Shown here one piece after another: positions 4,350 to 12,900 of a stretch of DNA of 15,281 nucleotides (position 1 is its first letter; each line of letters opens with the position of its first letter). This DNA is from Vitrella brassicaformis CCMP3155 (taxonomy: Eukaryota > Protista > Chromerida). The position numbers and the translations under genes are program-made. The stretch covers positions 1 through 15,281 of the forward strand of contig CDMY01000853.1 of assembly GCA_001179505.1 (NCBI GenBank). The letters run 5' to 3'. The notes under the pieces were generated by a model. That model worked only from the letters and a program-made list of their open reading frames with translations. It was not told where the DNA came from and searched no databases.

Positions 4350-6199
4350 ATGGCTCTGACCTTGTGGTTGCTGTTAGCTCTGATTGGCGCATGTGGCGCC
4401 CGAGGTCGCCCTTCCATGCCGCTCAAGGTGCCCAACGCCAACACTGAAAGTAAGTACTCACTTGTGTGTAATGTGATATGTGACGAGGGCGGTTTCTCTT
4501 TCTGGCGGGGCGCTTTCTGTGCAGAAAGGCGAGAACTGCTCGGGGCCGTCCACAGAAGGCACAAGAGATGGCGGAAATGGGAACGTCATCATTCGCACAG
4601 CGCAGCTGGCTGTACTGCAGAAGATGGCCGCGGGGACGTCATCCTTCGATGGAACAACCAAACACTCGACACCGTCCGCTCGAAGGAACTTGGGGCGGCG
4701 GAGGCCTCCCGGACCTACGCAATGGTCAACTTGGCCATGTTTGACGCCGTCAACGGCATCGACCTTTCGTCGTCCTCAAGCAAAACCTGCCCCCGCTACC
4801 CAGCCCTTGTTGGGGCTGTAGGAGCCCCCAAGTGCGCCGACAGAGAGGCTGCGGCCGCTGCAGCCGCTCACGCAGTGCTCGCGGGTCTCTATCCGGACAT
4901 GGCTGATACCTACAATGCGCAATTGGCAGAGGATCTTGAGTCCCGCAGCGGAGACAACTTCGACAGGGGCGTCCAGTGGGGCGCCATGGTCGGCCGCCAA
5001 GTCGTCACGGCCCGCAAGGACGACGGGTCGTCCCCGTCGGAAACCCTCGCGAAAAGTGACCAAGTGGGGGAGTTTCGACAGGACTGGACAAGTGCACAAT
5101 ACCGCAATATGGATCCCTTCGGCATCAAAGACAAGGCGCCTTACCGCAGCCCGGGGCCTCCCGCTCTTGACAGTCCCGAATACGCCAGGGACCACAGCGA
5201 GGCGCGTCTGGAAGGCGACGCTAGCGACTTCAACCAGACAAAGGAGGAGATATTCCGGTTCTGGAAGGGTGGCAGCGGCTCCGCCCGGCCCCCAGGTGAG
5301 TGAGTGAGGGGATGATGGTACATACCTACCTCCGTGGCTCACCGGCAGTTTCTCTCGATGCAGGTGAGTGGATCAAGATCGGCCAGGTGGTGGCGGAGCA
5401 GCAAGGGACAACAAAGTCGCTATCAGGAACGGCGCGGCTGTTTGCGCTCTTGAGCGCTGCGTTGGCCGATTCTACCATCGTCGCTTGGGACAGCAAGTTC
5501 ACGGTATGTGTGTGTGGGTGGGGTGTGCACTCAGCTGCACGACTCGACTCATCGACCCGCATCGAGTCCATCGTTGTTCTCTCTCTTTGAATGTGCCATG
5601 CAGTATCGCCATTGGCGGCCCCAGACGGCCATTCGAGAGGCCAACACGGATGGCAACAGCGAGACGGTGCAAGTGGACGGCTGGACGCCGCGAAACGGCA
5701 GCCCGGGAAGCTCACCCGAACACACATCAGGTACACACACGCATACCGTAGCCAACCGTGTACCTGCAGCATGTCGACCCCCTGCCTGTGTCTCTCGTAT
5801 GGTTCTATCTATCTCTTGCTGTCGGCCTGACAGGCCAAAGCACGTTTGCCGGTGCTGGGTCCACCGTCCTGGCCGCCTTCTACTGCACCGACCAAATCAC
5901 ATTCACATTCGAGGGTACTGTGCGCATGAACAGACGTGACGGGCACACACATGTTTTGGATGCGTGTGTGCTGTGCTGTGCTGTTTTGTGTATGGGTCTG
6001 TGCAGGTGACGACGCCATCGCAGGGGAGCGAACGTACACCAGTTTCTCAGAGGCGGCCGCTGAGGCCGGCCAGGCCCGCATCTTTGCTGGTATCCACTTT
6101 CGGTTCAGCGATCAGGCGGGCCAGGCGGCCGGCCGGGCCCTTGCAAACGAGATACTCGGCTCCTTCCTTCGGTGCCGCCATTGCTCACACTGTGCTTAA
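4350..6199 (+). CDS. Secreted vanadium-dependent haloperoxidase-like protein (PAP2/VHPO superfamily, bacterial/fungal VCPO-like type), about 470 aa, 6 exons
   Basis: Exons: 4350-4449, 4525-5295, 5364-5503, 5604-5730, 5834-5914, 6006-6199 (1413 nt, TAA at 6197-6199). The first acceptor could instead be 4620/4621, which keeps the same phase. Signal peptide MALTLWLLLALIGACGA. Family N-terminal motifs VILRWN, ASRTYAMVNLAMFDAVNGI and AAAAAAHAVLAGLYP. Active-site motifs AWDSKFTYRHWRP, PEHTSGQS and RIFAGIHF. Confidence 0.9.
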
Positions 6200-6256
6200 T
6201 TGAAGACAAAATGAACGAGCTGGGGGTGCGAGGGATGAGAGCGGGGTGCGGCCAGG

Positions 6257-6260
<4 letters not shown>

Positions 6261-6288
<28 letters not shown>
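6261..6288. repeat. (TG)14 microsatellite
   Basis: Read directly from the sequence. Representative of many CA/GT tracts in this window. Confidence 0.9.
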
Positions 6289-6293
<5 letters not shown>

Positions 6294-6638
6294 CCAAGCG
6301 GTGATTGGGTGGGTGTTGCTGGTGCTGGCTGGTATTTTTCGGTCACTCGCTGGCAGTTTTTGCGTCCATGCCGTGGCGGCATCGATTGCTATAGCAATTG
6401 TGCAATAGCCCAAGTGAATGCCACAGGCAGTTTTTTCTCTTCCGGTGTGTGGGAGGCTGTCCAGCTAGTGTGTGTCGGCGTTTTGTGCAGTGTGAGAAAC
6501 ATCATCACAGCGACCGACGGACGGACAACGTGAGCGCATTCCAATCTTCCTTCCAAAACAGCCAAGGTTGTTTGTATGCACGTGCGTCCCAACCACCCAA
6601 AGATGGATCGAAGGACGCACGGATGCACTGCTCGTCAG

Positions 6639-7905
6639 ACACACACACACACGAGACGGGTCGATCACAAACGTCCGGCTGCTGTCTGTCTGTCGGTCTT
6701 GACGACACGCTTCTCATTAAATGCTAAAGGGCCCACCACGCAACGCCCCACACAGTGTGTGTGGTGGGCTGGCTGGCAGGAAAGGGACCGAGAAAAGCAT
6801 GGCACGCACTAGCCACCCACCGCCCAGCACAAGAAAACACGCCTGCCTGCCTGCCTGCCTGCCCGCGTCTCCTATCTCGATCCCTCCCGATATCTCTGTG
6901 TGTGTCTGTCGCGTGAAGACCTCCTCGATCGATCCATCGGCCGGTCTGTCGGTTTGCTGACTAGTCAGTCCGTCATTCATTCAGTCATGGCTGTGCGTCC
7001 GTCCAGGTCGATGACGTCCTCCCCCTCGTCGACCATGGCGTCAAAATCGGCGCTCTCCGCCTCGATGTCACAACCAGACGTAATGATGCCAAAACTGATG
7101 ACCGACCGACAAGCACACATGAGGGAGTGGGGAATGTGTGTGTTGGCCAGCTACTGCATTCATTTAGTGCTCACTCTTCGTCGCTGGATGGTGCTGCGTC
7201 CTCCCCATCGGCTGGCTGCCCGTCCTGACCTGGGCCTGCCGCACGGTCGGGCAATGACGCCTGCACACACACACACACACACACACAGATGGACAGTGAG
7301 CGGCAGCTTGGTGCCTATTCATTCGTCCGTCTGGTGGTCGTCTCTCTCACCGCAGCAGTAGGTTGGTCGTTGTCTTGTGTGTGTTGATCGTGCGATGGGG
7401 GGGCTGCAGTGGGGTCGAAATCGGCCTGTCTGCCGCCCTCATCTGGTGAACACCAGACAGACACACCAACACATCCATCTCCGCGTGTCTGTCGAGAGTT
7501 TGTGTCAGTCATATTGCTCACCCACCTGTGGGCTGGTCATCCCGCGTGATGATCTGTCCATCGTCTGAGGGCTCGAACTCCTCGTCGTCATACTCACCGT
7601 CGGCCTCGATCTCCTCCTCTATCTCATCACTCCACACACACACACACACACACATGGCCTCACTCATACACAATGCCCTACCCCTCCCCGCTCGCTTACT
7701 CCAGTGACGACTCGCGAGCAGCCGCTGCCCCAGTGACCGTCGCAAACGGCCCCCCCGCCGTCTTGCCGCCCACTGGCCCACCCAGGTCCAGGTCTTGTGT
7801 CGCCTTCTTGTCATGTGACGAGGTGGTCAGGGAGGGGGCGATGCCCGCCTGTGGTAGCCAAATATCGACGTCGGCTTGGGCGCACCCTGCACACCACAGC
7901 ACACG
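6639..7905. repeat. Diverged segmental duplicate (about 1.27 kb) of 9571..10907, the 3' half of the CEP43-like gene
   Basis: Colinear similarity with multiple substitutions and small indels in the UTR, introns and one exon. Unique flanks on both sides. Both ends fall in CA-rich low-complexity tracts. Confidence 0.88.
6977..7886 (-). pseudogene. 5'-truncated duplicate of CEP43-like exons 8-12 with a 1-nt deletion in exon 8 (pseudogene, or a new short gene if started at ATG 7968)
   Basis: Exons (-): 7886-7700 (187 nt versus 188 nt in the parent), 7629-7526, 7442-7351, 7260-7175, 7094-6977. All splice sites are retained. The parental frame hits TGA at 7829-7827. Confidence 0.65.
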
Positions 7906-8165: not shown

Positions 8166-8465
8166 NNNNNNNNNNNNNNNNNNNNNNNNNNNNNNNNNNN
8201 NNNNNNNNNNNNNNNNNNNNNNNNNNNNNNNNNNNNNNNNNNNNNNNNNNNNNNNNNNNNNNNNNNNNNNNNNNNNNNNNNNNNNNNNNNNNNNNNNNNN
8301 NNNNNNNNNNNNNNNNNNNNNNNNNNNNNNNNNNNNNNNNNNNNNNNNNNNNNNNNNNNNNNNNNNNNNNNNNNNNNNNNNNNNNNNNNNNNNNNNNNNN
8401 NNNNNNNNNNNNNNNNNNNNNNNNNNNNNNNNNNNNNNNNNNNNNNNNNNNNNNNNNNNNNNNNN
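8166..8465. other. Assembly gap (300 N)
   Basis: Run of N. Confidence 0.99.
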
Positions 8466-9910: not shown

Positions 9911-12900
9911 TCATTCAGTCATGGCTGTGCGTCCGTCCAGGTCGATGACGTCCTCCCCCTCGTCGACCATGGCGTCAAAATCGGCGCTCTCCGCCNNNNN
10001 NNNNNNNNNNNNNNNNNNNNNNNNNNNNNNNNNNNNNNNNNNNNNNNNNNNNNNNNNNNNNNNNNNNNNNNNNNNNNNNNNNNNNNNNNNNNNNNNNNNN
10101 NNNNNNNNNNNNNNNNNNNNNNNNNNNNNNNNNNNNNNNNNNNNNNNNNNNNNNNNNNNNNNNNNNNNNNNNNNNNNNNNNNNNNNNNNNNNNNNNNNNN
10201 NNNNNNNNNNNNNNNNNNNNNNNNNNNNNNNNNNNNNNNNNNNNNNNNNNNNNNNNNNNNNNNNNNNNNNNNNNNNNNNNNNNNNNNNNNNNNNNTATTC
10301 ATTCGTCCGTCCGTCTGGTGGTCGTCTTTCTCACCGCAGCAGTAGGTTGGTCGTTGTCTTGTGTGTGTTGATCGTGCGATGGGGGGGCTGCAGTGGGGTC
10401 GAAATCGGCCTGTCTGCCGCCCTCATCTGGTGCACACCAGACAGACGCGCCACACACATCAATCCATCTCCACGTGTCTGCCGAAAGTTTGTGTCAGTAA
10501 TATTGCTCACCCACCTGTGGGCTGGTCATCCCGCGTGATGATCTGTCCATCGTCTGAGGGCTCGAACTCCTCGTCGTCATACTCACCGTCGGCCTCGATC
10601 TCCTCCTCTATCTCATCACTCCACACACACACACACACACACACATGGCCTCACTCATACACAATGCCCTACCCCTCCCCGCTCGCTCACTCTAGCGACG
10701 ACGCGCGAGCAGCCGCTGCCCCAGTGACCGTCGCAAACGGCCCCCCCGCCGTCTTGCCGCCCACTGGCCCGTCCAGGTTCAGGTCTTGTGTCGCCTTCTT
10801 GTCATGTGACGAGGTGGTCAGAGAGGGGGGCCATGCCCGCCGGTGGTAGCCGAATATCGACGTGGGCTTGGACGCACCCTGCACACCACACCACAGCACA
10901 GCACACGGGGGGACAAGACAAAGGGTATGGATAAGGGAGATGGATGGAGAGCTGCACTGCATCAATCATTGTTGCCCTGCTTTGCTTATATGTACTGCTC
11001 ACATGAGTGGCGTCCTGCTCCCGTGTGTTGGTGTTGATGGTGGCGGTGGTGGTGCTGCCGACGGTATCGCTGAGCCCCTCACTGGCACGAAAGCCATCCG
11101 CCGACATCTCATCAGCACCGATGGACGCATCACCATCTGACTCACACCGTTGGAGCGAAATACACAAGTGAGGCTTCAATTCATGTGTTGTGTGTCAATT
11201 GTTGCTGCATGGTCATGTCATGGTCCTACTTACCGTGGGAAGCCTTATGGTCCGTGCCCCCCTCCTGGCCGCCAGTTTCGTCATCCTCGTCGTCTAGGCC
11301 TGCGGATGGCCCGGCGGCATCCTCAGCCTGCGTGAGGCTCTGAGTCTTCTTCATGTCCAAGGGCGGCAAACGAGTGTGACGCGGGTCGGGGAGATCTGAT
11401 ACACACACACACACACAGGCGTCAATCGAGATGGCTGCATGGCCATGTGTGCGGCTCGTTGCGTACCATGGACATCTCTGGCTGCCATCGATCCCACTAC
11501 AGTGCTCTCCTCAATGCCCTGTCCGCCCCCAGCCGCAGCCGCCCGAGCGATCTCGCGCATCTTGCCGGCGATGGTGTCGTCAAACGACGCACTCAGCTCC
11601 AGGCTATCGCCCACAGCATACGCGCCCGCCAGCCCGCTCAGCCGTATGTCCCTCTCCGGCAGCGGCTTCGATGGCGGCACTGGTGAGAGGATGGGCCGGT
11701 TGTCGTAGGAGTGCTGCAGTGGGGAGGGCAGCTGCGAGTTGGTCATGGGCGTCTGGCCCGGGGGGGTCACCTCAAAATGGATATCAGAATCCTGACCGAC
11801 CAGCACGGACACAGCAGATGTCTGTCCGTCCGTCTGTCTGTCCGTCTGTCTGCCTGTCAAACACACCCATTCGCCCACCTGTCCAGCGTCCTCAGATCGG
11901 TGATTCAGGCCGTTGCGCATGTCGACCCTGGCCCCCTCACCCGCCGCCCCCGCGAGCAGCTCGTTGAGTCCGTCGTCCACCGCATTCCGCCGGTCGAGTG
12001 TGTAGTTGACGATGTCCTGCAGCAGGGGGTTGTCTGTGGAGGCNNNNNNNNNNNNNNNNNNNNNNNNNNNNNNNNNNNNNNNNNNNNNNNNNNNNNNNNN
12101 NNNNNNNNNNNNNNNNNNNNNNNNNNNNNNNNNNNNNNNNNNNNNNNNNNNNNNNNNNNNNNNNNNNNNNNNNNNNNNNNNNNNNNNNNNNNNNNNNNNN
12201 NNNNNNNNNNNNNNNNNNNNNNNNNNNNNNNNNNNNNNNNNNNNNNNNNNNNNNNNNNNNNNNNNNNNNNNNNNNNNNNNNNNNNNNNNNNNNNNNNNNN
12301 NNNNNNNNNNNNNNNNNNNNNNNNNNNNNNNNNNNNNNNNNNNGATGGATGGAGAGCTGCACTGCATCAATCATTGTTGCCCTGCTTTGCTTATATGTAC
12401 TGCTCACATGAGTGGCGTCCTGCTCCCGTGTGTTGGTGTTGATGGTGGCGGTGGTGGTGCTGCCGACGGTATCGCTGAGCCCCTCACTGGCACGAAAGCC
12501 ATCCGCCGACATCTCATCAGCACCGATGGACGCATCACCATCTGACTCACACCGTTGGAGCGAAATACACAAGTGAGGCTTCAATTCATGTGTTGTGTGT
12601 CAATTGTTGCTGCATGGTCATGTCATGGTCCTACTTACCGTGGGAAGCCTTATGGTCCGTGCCCCCCTCCTGGCCGCCAGTTTCGTCATCCTCGTCGTCT
12701 AGGCCTGCGGATGGCCCGGCGGCATCCTCAGCCTGCGTGAGGCTCTGAGTCTTCTTCATGTCCAAGGGCGGCAAACGAGTGTGACGCGGGTCGGGGAGAT
12801 CTGATACACACACACACACACAGGCGTCAATCGAGATGGCTGCATGGCCATGTGTGCGGCTCGTTGCGTACCATGGACATCTCTGGCTGCCATCGATCCC

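What the first reader, a model, noticed from the sequence alone, without database searches (positions are those of the whole stretch)
5721..5844. Catalytic S-G-H motif of the haloperoxidase reads S-G-Q while all other vanadate ligands are intact
Seen: exon 4 ends CAC ACA TCA G and exon 5 begins GC CAA AGC, giving P-E-H-T-S-G-Q-S. The alternative AG at 5769 is out of frame, so this is not a splice-choice artefact. Lys (5495), Arg (5616), Ser-Gly, Arg (6077) and the axial His (6095) are all present. Established: these correspond to K353, R360, S402, G403, R490 and H496 of Curvularia inaequalis VCPO, where H404 is the distal acid/base His (also the general acid in PAP2 phosphatases), and changing it impairs chloride oxidation. 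Also seen: His at the usual Tyr position (PEH versus PxY) and Ser at the F397-equivalent position. Inference: a natural variant with shifted chemistry (bromide/iodide only, sulfoxidation, vanadate or phosphate binding, or a non-halogenating reaction), possibly with the upstream His compensating. It may define an uncharacterised VHPO subfamily.
Basis: partly seen in the sequence, partly recalled or inferred. Interest (0 to 1): 0.72.

Follow-up and report, generated by a model that had tools for sequence, protein, structure and literature searches.

The report
Gln-for-His vanadium haloperoxidase-like subfamily
The glutamine that replaces the "catalytic" histidine in this Vitrella enzyme gene is neither an error nor decay: it is the rule in a large, unstudied, mostly bacterial branch of the vanadium-haloperoxidase fold, and that branch also carries an extra arginine that histidine-bearing relatives never have.

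Summary
The six-exon gene (4350-6200, +) is identical to the public 470-residue Vitrella brassicaformis CCMP3155 protein. Splicing at 5731/5833 gives P-E-H-T-S-G-Q-S-T, and every in-frame alternative keeps the CAA codon.

The Gln is not private to this gene. PEHTSGQST is the consensus of a well-supported clade of 40 rows (38 Gln, 2 Thr). Apart from Vitrella, every member whose source I could identify is bacterial (Entotheonella, Acidobacteriota, Proteobacteria). Its sister clade of 46 rows is all His. Vitrella keeps 107 of 114 clade-conserved positions, and all six vanadate/phosphate-binding residues are intact. The model matches the Zobellia iodoperoxidase at Z 45.

A new point: Gln co-varies with an Arg (Vitrella R288, codon 5286-5288). 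This Arg is present in 70 of 75 relatives without His and in 0 of 124 with His. I infer, without having measured it, that this Arg took over the charge and hydrogen-bonding role of the lost His.

The protein's activity is unknown.

This scan had already noted the same gene as a bacterial-type haloperoxidase homologue.

The parts
4350..6200 (+). Whole gene: 6 exons (4350-4449, 4525-5295, 5364-5503, 5604-5730, 5834-5914, 6006-6200), 470 aa, stop TAA at 6198-6200
   Evidence: All introns are GT..AG. The exon translations are found end to end in public protein P0268 of Vitrella brassicaformis CCMP3155 and are colinear with bacterial homologues.
4350..4406 (+). N-terminal hydrophobic leader (M-A-L-T-L-W-L-L-L-A-L-I-G-A-C-G-A-R-G), a probable signal peptide. 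It is followed by a basic, low-confidence stretch up to about residue 67.
   Evidence: Read from the sequence. pLDDT is below 60 for residues 1-67. Bacterial homologues also start with hydrophobic leaders. No signal-peptide predictor was run.
5286..5288 (+). Arg288 (CGG) in S-A-R-P-P-G-E-W, the first residue of the first helix of the C-terminal bundle. This is the residue that co-varies with loss of the distal His.
   Evidence: Diagnostic column R (Gln clade, 100%) versus Q (His sister clade, 100%). Arg is in 70/75 non-His and 0/124 His proteins. Helix 288-303 in the model.
5486..5497 (+). Trp332 (TGG 5486-5488, equivalent to W350 of Curvularia VCPO) and Lys335 (AAG 5495-5497, equivalent to K353)
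   Evidence: Lys is invariant in 108 aligned sequences.
5616..5621 (+). Arg342-Pro343 of the K-x6-R-P motif (equivalent to R360)
   Evidence: invariant.
5712..5730 (+). End of exon 4: Ser374 (Phe397 position), P-E-His377 (Tyr400 position)-T-Ser379, and the first base of Gly380
5731..5833 (+). Intron 4, 103 nt, phase 1, GT..AG; it splits the Gly380 codon
   Evidence: this is the only in-frame donor/acceptor pair that gives a homologue-colinear junction.
5834..5850 (+). Start of exon 5: last two bases of Gly380, Gln381 (CAA 5836-5838, the distal-His position), S-T-F, and Ala385 (GCC 5848-5850, a second diagnostic column)
6077..6097 (+). R-I-F-A-G-I-H: Arg431 (R490 equivalent), Ala434 (third diagnostic column; Gly in the His sister clade) and His437 (axial His496 equivalent)
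   Evidence: Arg and His are invariant.

Best explanation
The gene encodes a secreted protein with the two-bundle vanadium-haloperoxidase (VHPO) fold. It belongs to a deep clade that, apart from this gene, is bacterial wherever the source could be identified. In that clade the distal acid/base His of the S-G-H motif is Gln by rule (consensus P-E-H-T-S-G-Q-S-T). Vitrella most likely acquired the gene from a marine bacterium and has since gained five spliceosomal introns. The gene is intact and under constraint.

The oxyanion pocket is fully kept: Lys335, Arg342, Ser379, Gly380, Arg431 and the axial His437. The protein should therefore still bind vanadate, or phosphate, covalently or coordinatively at His437.

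What changed is the proton and charge partner above the anion. The clade lost the His. It fixed an Arg (R288) at the N-terminal end of the neighbouring helix, together with two small packing changes (Ala385, Ala434). I propose that Arg288, not Gln381 and not His377, now supplies the positive charge and hydrogen bond to the apical oxygen, and that Gln acts mainly as a polar filler. Neighbouring clades put Thr, Leu, Phe or Met at the same position while keeping the Arg.

The most likely activity is a vanadate-dependent peroxidase reaction with an altered pH or halide profile (iodide/bromide rather than chloride).

Shown: the Gln is real at the level of the assembly, it is clade-wide, the pocket is conserved, the fold matches, and the Arg co-occurs with loss of His. 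Inferred: that Arg288 reaches the pocket, that vanadate is bound, and any activity.

My probabilities: genuine clade feature in a functional gene, 0.95; Arg-for-His rewiring, 0.45; haloperoxidase activity of some kind, 0.35.
For: Motif census: 41 S-G-Q against 92 S-G-H among 267 homologues.

Tree: a clade with SH-aLRT 98 holds 40 rows (38 Gln, 2 Thr), with Vitrella nested inside it. Its sister clade of 46 rows is all His. The character needs far fewer changes on the tree than shuffled labels do (9 against a mean of 43).

Pairwise identity inside the Gln clade runs from 42% to 85% (median 55%), so the Gln has been held over long divergence. Vitrella keeps 107/114 columns that are at least 90% conserved there.

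K, R-P, G, R and H are invariant across 108 sequences.

Diagnostic columns between the Gln and His clades are R/Q, Q/H, A/S and A/G, and Vitrella has the Gln-clade state at all four.

Arg census: 46/49 against 0/65; in species-representative genomes 19/21 against 0/48, with the Thr/Leu group found through a pattern that does not contain the Arg; by pairwise alignment 70/75 against 0/124.

Topology: Arg288 starts helix 288-303. Lys335 sits near the end of the antiparallel helix 310-338. Gln381 starts helix 380-395. His437 precedes helix 439-459. All four therefore lie at the same end of the bundle.

The Arg lies in the loop-to-helix segment that carries Asp292 of Curvularia VCPO (seven residues upstream) and the Tyr at position 271 of the 4CIT chain. 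Asp292 and Gly293 line the substrate pocket (PMC10278073).

Fold: Z 45.2, rmsd 2.5 A over 377 residues to 4CIT; Z 33-35 to XhnO11, Curvularia VCPO, NapH3 and NapH1. Profile against 4CIT: E 2.7e-55.

The H404A mutant of Curvularia VCPO was crystallised with vanadate bound (1VNG; table in PMC8407142), so loss of this His does not by itself abolish binding.
Against: No coordinates were available, so the distance from Arg288 to the pocket was not measured.

The Arg/His association rests on only 2-3 independent transitions on the tree, so the sign test has no power.

There are exceptions. Two S-G-Q genes in genome bins lack the Arg (L009 has Gln, L011 has Trp), and 5 of 75 non-His proteins lack it.

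The distal His is described as critical to vanadium-peroxo formation (bioRxiv 10.1101/2025.10.24.684477), and from my own knowledge of the Hemrika/Renirie mutant work, H404A loses chlorination. The clade may therefore not be a haloperoxidase at all.

No conserved neighbouring gene gives a functional hint. No member of this clade or of its His sister clade has been characterised, as far as I could find. The CAA codon was not verified in reads or cDNA.
Confidence: 0.6

Rival explanations
1. Sequencing, assembly or splice-choice artefact: the true residue is His.
For: A single third-position change (CAA to CAC/CAT) would give His. The scaffold is a draft with three 300-N gaps. Reads could not be checked.
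Against: The junction peptide equals the consensus of the clade in which the gene is nested. Vitrella also has the Gln-clade state at the three other diagnostic columns (R288, A385, A434). Every in-frame splice alternative keeps CAA.
Confidence: 0.02
2. A private, degenerative substitution in a decaying, horizontally acquired gene.
For: Loss of a catalytic residue is a classic first sign of decay. Vitrella has a few unusual residues at conserved positions (for example A215D and R388Q in P0001 numbering).
Against: The Gln is shared by 38 of 40 clade rows. The reading frame is open through six exons with canonical splice sites. 107/114 clade-conserved columns are kept. The model is confident, with pLDDT of 95 or more from residue 68 on.
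Confidence: 0.03
3. The Gln clade is a phosphatase or phosphotransferase of the PAP2 kind rather than a vanadate enzyme. His437 would be the nucleophile, and the extra Arg would stabilise a more highly charged phosphoryl substrate or a good leaving group such as a pyrophosphate.
For: The C-terminal bundle matches class A acid phosphatases at Z 13-14. Apo-VCPO traps a phospho-His intermediate (3BB0). An added Arg raises the positive charge of the pocket. Some sources label the His-bearing relatives PA-phosphatase.
Against: In PAP2 phosphatases the S-G-H His is the general acid for the leaving group (established knowledge), so its loss should cripple hydrolysis of ordinary monoesters. The Asp of the S-R-x5-H-x3-D motif is Ser here. 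The whole-protein fold and the N-terminal bundle are of the VHPO type, not the phosphatase type.
Confidence: 0.17
4. A non-halogenating enzyme, or a non-catalytic oxyanion-binding protein, that has reused the VHPO scaffold in the way NapH3 has.
For: NapH3 is a VHPO homologue that catalyses a ketol rearrangement without halogenation and is a top structural match (Z 33.2). The residue at the His position is free to vary (Q, T, L, F, M) in related clades, as expected if it is no longer catalytic.
Against: All six anion ligands, including the axial His, stay invariant over wide divergence, which argues for continued use of the bound anion. No biosynthetic gene cluster surrounds the bacterial members.
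Confidence: 0.2
5. One reading: the upstream His of P-E-H (His377) takes over the acid/base role of the missing His.
For: His at this position is enriched in the Gln clade (35/39) compared with 15/46 in the sister clade and 1/30 in the more distant rows.
Against: It is not specific to the Gln clade: a third of the His-bearing sister clade has it too, and four Gln-clade members have Tyr. It did not pass the filter for diagnostic columns, whereas the Arg did.
Confidence: 0.1

Closest known systems
Vanadium iodoperoxidase Zg-VIPO1 of Zobellia galactanivorans (PDB 4CIT/4USZ)
   Same: The best structural and sequence match. Z 45.2, rmsd 2.5 A over 377 residues; profile E 2.7e-55. It is a monomer-type two-bundle fold and shares K-x6-R-P, P-E-[YH]-T-S-G and R-x3-G-x-H.
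   Different: Identity is only 21-22%. Zg-VIPO1 has S-G-H, Thr where Vitrella has Arg288, Phe where Vitrella has Ser374, and a 13-residue insertion in the loop before the P-G-x-W helix.
Vanadium chloroperoxidase of Curvularia inaequalis (PDB 1VNC and mutants)
   Same: Same fold (Z about 34). K353, R360, S402, G403, R490 and H496 all have counterparts, and W350 is kept as Trp332.
   Different: H404 is Gln, F397 is Ser, Y400 is His, T299 is Arg, and the D500 position is Ser. The Curvularia enzyme also has about 140 extra residues.
NapH3, a non-halogenating VHPO homologue (PDB 8CXL), and NapH1
   Same: Same two-bundle fold (Z 32-33). NapH3 shows that the scaffold can be reused for chemistry other than halogenation.
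   Different: They belong to another branch (17-19% identity) and sit in a biosynthetic gene cluster. The Gln-clade genes are stand-alone.
Class A bacterial acid phosphatases and other PAP2 enzymes (PhoN, PhoC, EB-NSAP, PgpB, LpxE)
   Same: The C-terminal bundle and the three-motif anion site (Z 12-14).
   Different: They lack the N-terminal bundle. They need the motif-2 His as general acid and the motif-3 Asp, both of which are absent here. Pfam PAP2 scores 26.8 bits against a cut-off of 27.2.
Unnamed His-bearing sister clade (actinomycete, acidobacterial and myxobacterial proteins that NCBI labels 'vanadium-dependent haloperoxidase' or 'PA-phosphatase')
   Same: 41-48% identical to the Vitrella protein. 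Same length, same P-E-[HY]-x-S-G and G-I-H-F-E-F-S context, and Ser/Thr at the Phe397 position.
   Different: It has His/Gln/Ser/Gly where the Gln clade has Gln/Arg/Ala/Ala, and it lacks the Trp at the W350 position. As far as I could find it is also uncharacterised.

Membership tests
Vanadium-dependent haloperoxidase (two-bundle ZgVIPO/CiVCPO/NapH1 type) | Two helical bundles with the VHPO topology | tested here: met
   The AF2 model of P0268 has pLDDT 89 overall and 95 or more from residue 68 on. Z 45.2 to 4CIT and Z 32-35 to 9L8X, 1VNC, 8CXL, 3W35 and 3W36.
Vanadium-dependent haloperoxidase (two-bundle ZgVIPO/CiVCPO/NapH1 type) | Vanadate ligand set: Lys, Arg (K-x6-R-P), Ser-Gly, Arg, and the axial His | tested here: met
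   K335, R342, S379, G380, R431 and H437 are present. K, R, G, R and H are invariant and S is at least 90% conserved across 108 sequences.
Vanadium-dependent haloperoxidase (two-bundle ZgVIPO/CiVCPO/NapH1 type) | Distal acid/base His of S-G-H (His404 of CiVCPO) | tested here: not met
   Gln381 (CAA 5836-5838) aligns to His404 and to the ZgVIPO His.
Vanadium-dependent haloperoxidase (two-bundle ZgVIPO/CiVCPO/NapH1 type) | Binds vanadate and oxidises halide with peroxide | not testable with these tools
   This needs purified protein. No characterised member of the clade was found in the paper searches.
PAP2 superfamily (Pfam PF01569) | Pfam gathering score | tested here: not met
   P0268 scores 26.8 bits against a cut-off of 27.2. 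Among the two closest relatives, P0002 scores 17.1 bits and P0001 has no PAP2 hit at E 0.01 or better. The His-sister protein P0047 passes at 34.8. A newer precomputed Pfam release does list PF01569 for P0268, so this is borderline.
PAP2 superfamily (Pfam PF01569) | Motifs K-x6-R-P / P-S-G-H / S-R-x5-H-x3-D | tested here: inconclusive
   Motif 1 is complete. Motif 2 has S-G but Gln in place of His. Motif 3 has R-x5-H, but Ala in place of the leading Ser and Ser in place of the final Asp.
Gln clade of VHPO-like proteins (defined here) | Placement inside the clade on a maximum-likelihood tree | tested here: met
   Vitrella exon 2 lies inside the 40-row clade (SH-aLRT 98) and is sister to a 10-row group (SH-aLRT 94). 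This was a quick search, and Vitrella was represented by exon 2 only.
Gln clade of VHPO-like proteins (defined here) | Four diagnostic residues: Arg before P-P-G-E-W, Gln in S-G-Q, Ala four residues after the Gln, Ala three residues after the motif-3 Arg | tested here: met
   R288, Q381, A385 and A434 are all present.

The most novel reading that the evidence does not exclude
A large, overlooked branch of the VHPO fold, covering the Gln clade and its Thr/Leu neighbours, has moved its catalytic cationic and proton-relay residue from the motif-2 His to an Arg on a different helix. If so, it would carry out vanadate- or phosphate-dependent chemistry that differs from all characterised haloperoxidases and PAP2 phosphatases. 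One member of this branch was captured by a chromerid alga and is now a secreted eukaryotic enzyme.
Probability: 0.3. Interest if true: 0.7.

Novelty: new variant of a known kind. Interest (0 to 1): 0.55.

Why it matters
The distal His is treated as one of the defining catalytic residues of vanadium haloperoxidases and of PAP2 phosphatases. Here there is a natural clade that has done without it over long divergence: dozens of distinct proteins, found in Tectimicrobiota (Entotheonella), Acidobacteriota and Proteobacteria and in one alga. The rest of the anion pocket stays invariant, and the clade has a candidate replacement Arg.

That gives enzymologists a ready-made swap experiment on what the His actually does: Q381H/R288Q in this protein, and the reverse in the His-bearing sister clade. 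It also flags a group of proteins that databases currently label 'vanadium-dependent haloperoxidase' without any evidence of that activity.

For Vitrella, it adds a secreted enzyme of bacterial origin to a reef-associated alga. Earlier notes in this scan report other VHPO-like genes in the same genome.

Tried and rejected

2. Exon-by-exon Pfam and NCBIfam scans. They gave only weak VCPO_N and DUF6851 hits for exon 2 and nothing for the short exons. NCBIfam also has no model for full-length clade members.

3. PDB sequence search with exon 2 alone. It returned only spurious hits such as methyl-CoM reductase gamma. Exon 6, and full-length homologues, were needed to reach 4CIT.

4. Gene neighbourhood in bacteria. 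Two contexts were read, and an all-against-all comparison of flanking ORFs was run over 24 loci. No conserved partner emerged, only generic sensor-kinase and ABC ATPase families.

5. A phylogenetically corrected test of the Arg/His coupling. There are only 2-3 independent pairs, so it has no power.

6. Measuring the Arg288-to-pocket distance. The structure tool returns no coordinates and none are stored in /data, so only a topological argument was possible.

7. Literature. There were no papers on Vitrella haloperoxidases, on Entotheonella VHPOs of this type, or on a Gln variant. The Zobellia structure paper and the Renirie 2000 mutant paper are not held.

8. I did not type or join the spliced product myself. 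Exons were searched by reference, and the full-length protein was used only as the stored public record P0268 that a search returned.
Full report
THE OBSERVATION

The window is one whole 15,281-base scaffold with three 300-N gaps. On the + strand, a six-exon gene runs from ATG 4350 to a stop at 6198-6200. The exons are 4350-4449, 4525-5295, 5364-5503, 5604-5730, 5834-5914 and 6006-6200, and every intron is GT..AG.

Exon 4 ends CCC GAA CAC ACA TCA G and exon 5 begins GC CAA AGC ACG. This reads P-E-H-T-S-G-Q-S-T, with the Gly codon split by a 103-nt phase-1 intron.

I listed every GT and AG in 5700-5850. Only donors 5731, 5758, 5773 and 5788, each with acceptor 5833, keep the frame. All four keep CAA, and only 5731/5833 gives a junction that matches homologues.

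A later protein search returned the public 470-residue record for this gene, P0268 ('unnamed protein product, Vitrella brassicaformis CCMP3155'). My six exon translations lie end to end in it, with one residue at each split codon. The splice model is therefore also the published one.

In protein numbering the pocket is K335, R342, S379, G380, Q381, R431 and H437.

IS THE GLN PRIVATE OR AN ERROR?

It is neither. I searched with exon 2 by reference and found 241 relatives. The closest are 50-60% identical. Those with names are from Candidatus Entotheonella, and the rest are from metagenomes.

A motif scan shows that nearly all of the roughly 45 closest proteins carry P-E-H-T-S-G-Q-S-T together with R-I-F-A-G-I-H-F-E-F-S. 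The next tier carries P-E-[HY]-x-S-G-H-S-S with R-V-x-G-G-x-H. An exhaustive HMMER search of cluster representatives added more family members, including S-G-T, S-G-L, S-G-S and S-G-F variants.

A maximum-likelihood tree of 116 rows (LG+C20 by PMSF, quick search) puts Vitrella exon 2 inside a clade of 40 rows with SH-aLRT 98. That clade is 38 Gln and 2 Thr. A neighbouring clade of 46 rows (SH-aLRT 99) is entirely His; one of its rows was first miscalled by my regular expression and was corrected. The residue at this position needs 9 changes on the tree, against a mean of 43 for shuffled labels.

Inside the Gln clade, pairwise identity runs from 42% to 85%, so the Gln has been held across long divergence. 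Vitrella keeps 107 of the 114 columns that are at least 90% conserved there.

A scan of species-representative genomes places S-G-Q genes in Tectimicrobiota (Entotheonella), Acidobacteriota, and Alpha- and Gammaproteobacteria. The named genomes closest to Vitrella are Entotheonella, at 53-58% identity over exon 2.

It is therefore a resident eukaryotic gene, and its nesting among bacterial rows indicates a bacterial origin.

WHAT KIND OF PROTEIN IT IS

Alignments to solved structures place Gln on the S-G-H His of the Zobellia iodoperoxidase and on His404 of the Curvularia chloroperoxidase. The P-E-H His falls on Tyr400 and Ser374 falls on Phe397. A profile of 101 family members hits 4CIT at E 2.7e-55 and Curvularia VCPO at about 7e-30.

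The AlphaFold2 models are confident. The closest relative, P0001, has pLDDT 93.6. The Vitrella protein has 89.2 overall, with 95 or more from residue 68 onward; the first 67 residues (leader plus a basic stretch) are low-confidence.

VIA-align gives Z 45.2 (rmsd 2.5 A, 377 residues) to 4CIT. It gives Z 32-35 to XhnO11, Curvularia VCPO, NapH3 and NapH1, and Z 12-15 to algal bromoperoxidases and class A acid phosphatases, which share only the C-terminal bundle. Foldseek agrees.

Pfam's PAP2 model scores the Vitrella protein 26.8 bits against a cut-off of 27.2. Of its two closest relatives, P0002 scores 17.1 bits and P0001 has no PAP2 hit at E 0.01 or better. A member of the His sister clade passes.

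K, R-P, G, R and the axial H are invariant in a 108-sequence alignment.

WHAT GOES WITH THE GLN

I compared the Gln clade with its His sister clade column by column. Only four columns are fixed differently:
- Arg against Gln, just before P-P-G-E-W (Vitrella R288, codon 5286-5288).
- Gln against His (Vitrella Q381).
- Ala against Ser, four residues after the Gln (A385).
- Ala against Gly, three residues after the motif-3 Arg (A434).

Vitrella has the Gln-clade state at all four.

The Arg is striking beyond this pair of clades:
- On the tree set it is present in 46 of 49 non-His rows and in 0 of 65 His rows.
- In the genome set it is present in 19 of 21 against 0 of 48. The Thr/Leu group there was found through a pattern that does not contain the Arg.
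- By pairwise alignment of all 199 proteins with an intact anion set, it is present in 70 of 75 against 0 of 124.

A separate, more distant Leu-bearing group also has the Arg. Clades related to the Gln clade put Thr, Leu, Phe or Met at the His position and still keep the Arg.

The caveats are real. The tree supports only 2-3 independent transitions, so a corrected test has no power. Two S-G-Q genes in metagenome bins lack the Arg (L009, L011).

The P-E-H His is enriched in the Gln clade (35/39), but it also occurs in 15/46 sister-clade rows, and four Gln-clade rows have Tyr. The Ser at the Phe397 position is shared by both clades. The Trp at the W350 position is present in Vitrella and in 23/39 Gln-clade rows, but in none of the sister clade.

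WHERE THE ARG SITS

I could not obtain coordinates, so this is an argument from topology and not a measurement. In the models:
- Arg288 is the first residue of helix 288-303.
- Lys335 is near the end of the next, antiparallel helix 310-338.
- Gln381 opens helix 380-395.
- His437 precedes helix 439-459.

All four therefore lie at the same end of the C-terminal bundle.

In the profile alignment, the Arg corresponds to Thr299 of Curvularia VCPO, seven residues after Asp292. It lies in the same loop-to-helix segment as the Tyr at position 271 of the 4CIT chain. From memory, that Tyr is the active-site Tyr263 of the Zobellia paper's numbering. Asp292 and Gly293 line the substrate pocket of the Curvularia enzyme (PMC10278073).

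HOW IT PROBABLY WORKS

Shown: the anion pocket is intact and the fold is that of a VHPO.

Also relevant: the H404A mutant of Curvularia VCPO still holds vanadate in its crystal (1VNG; table in PMC8407142). The distal His is regarded as critical for forming the vanadium-peroxo species, polarised by a neighbouring Asp (bioRxiv 10.1101/2025.10.24.684477). From my own knowledge of the Hemrika 1999 and Renirie 2000 mutant studies, which are not held in the library, H404A loses chlorination but keeps some bromination.

My best reading is that the clade still binds vanadate at His437, and that Arg288 replaces the imidazolium as the cationic hydrogen-bond donor to the apical oxygen. Gln381 would serve as a polar filler. 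The result would be a peroxidase with a shifted halide and pH profile.

The main rivals are a phosphoryl-transfer enzyme and a non-halogenating or purely binding protein in the manner of NapH3.

Bacterial gene neighbourhoods give no help. The genes stand alone.

COMPARISON AND NOVELTY

This is a member of the VHPO fold family, but it fails one defining feature of a haloperoxidase, the distal His. I therefore do not file it as a haloperoxidase.

It belongs to a clade that databases label 'vanadium-dependent haloperoxidase' or 'hypothetical'. I found no description or assay of it in the searchable literature; most subscription journals are not covered.

I rate it a new variant of a known kind. 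The Vitrella gene itself is one horizontally acquired member of that variant.

Another note reported a different Vitrella VHPO-like gene, whose apparent His-to-Ser change was judged normal for its own family.

LIMITS

- No read-level check was possible.
- No coordinates were available.
- The tree is from a quick search, and Vitrella is represented in it by exon 2 only.
- The trait column itself was not removed from the tree alignment; it is one column of 438.
- Many homologues are unnamed metagenomic proteins, so 'bacterial wherever the source could be identified' rests on the named ones and on the genome scan.
The full-length product was used only as the stored public record P0268.

Noticed in passing
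window 4450-4524: Intron 1 is 75 nt, in frame and free of stops, so ORF 4350..5303 reads straight through it. The public model splices it out. Retaining it would add 25 residues between the leader and the mature domain.
   Followed up: partly
window 5295/5364, 5730/5834, 5914/6006: Introns 2, 4 and 5 are all phase 1. Each splits a Gly codon (G|GT, G|GC, G|GT) at a Gly that aligns with Gly in the bacterial homologues shown, which is consistent with intron gain at AG|G sites after transfer.
   Followed up: partly
window 4451-4640 (protein residues about 20-67): Between the hydrophobic leader and the conserved domain lies a basic, His/Arg/Lys-rich stretch with no counterpart in bacterial homologues and low model confidence. 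It may be a targeting or pro-peptide.
   Followed up: no
window 6258-6290 and 6638-6652: A (GT)n run and a (CA)n microsatellite lie just downstream of the stop codon.
   Followed up: no
window 8166-8465, 9996-10295, 12044-12343: Three gaps of exactly 300 N. The window is the whole scaffold.
   Followed up: no
L022, L023, L028-L033, L035, L068, L070: A related bacterial group (Actinomycetota, Acidobacteriota, one Gammaproteobacterium) has S-G-T or S-G-L at the distal position, R-I-[YF]-[QG]-G-I-H in motif 3, and the Arg in a G-T-[VT]-R-E-[TP]-G context.
   Followed up: partly
L009 and L011: Two alphaproteobacterial bins have S-G-Q but Gln or Trp in place of the co-varying Arg. Each is a single-base change away from CGG. 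These could be real exceptions or bin errors.
   Followed up: no
L012 6001-7304: The Gln-clade gene of a gammaproteobacterial bin is split into two ORFs (6001-6363 and 6558-7304), from either a frameshift or an assembly error.
   Followed up: no
P0149, P0187, P0204, P0226, P0239, P0247, P0249, P0261: Some His-bearing relatives are embedded in very large proteins of 1,000-5,700 residues, so the VHPO-like module also occurs as a domain of giant, presumably secreted, proteins.
   Followed up: no
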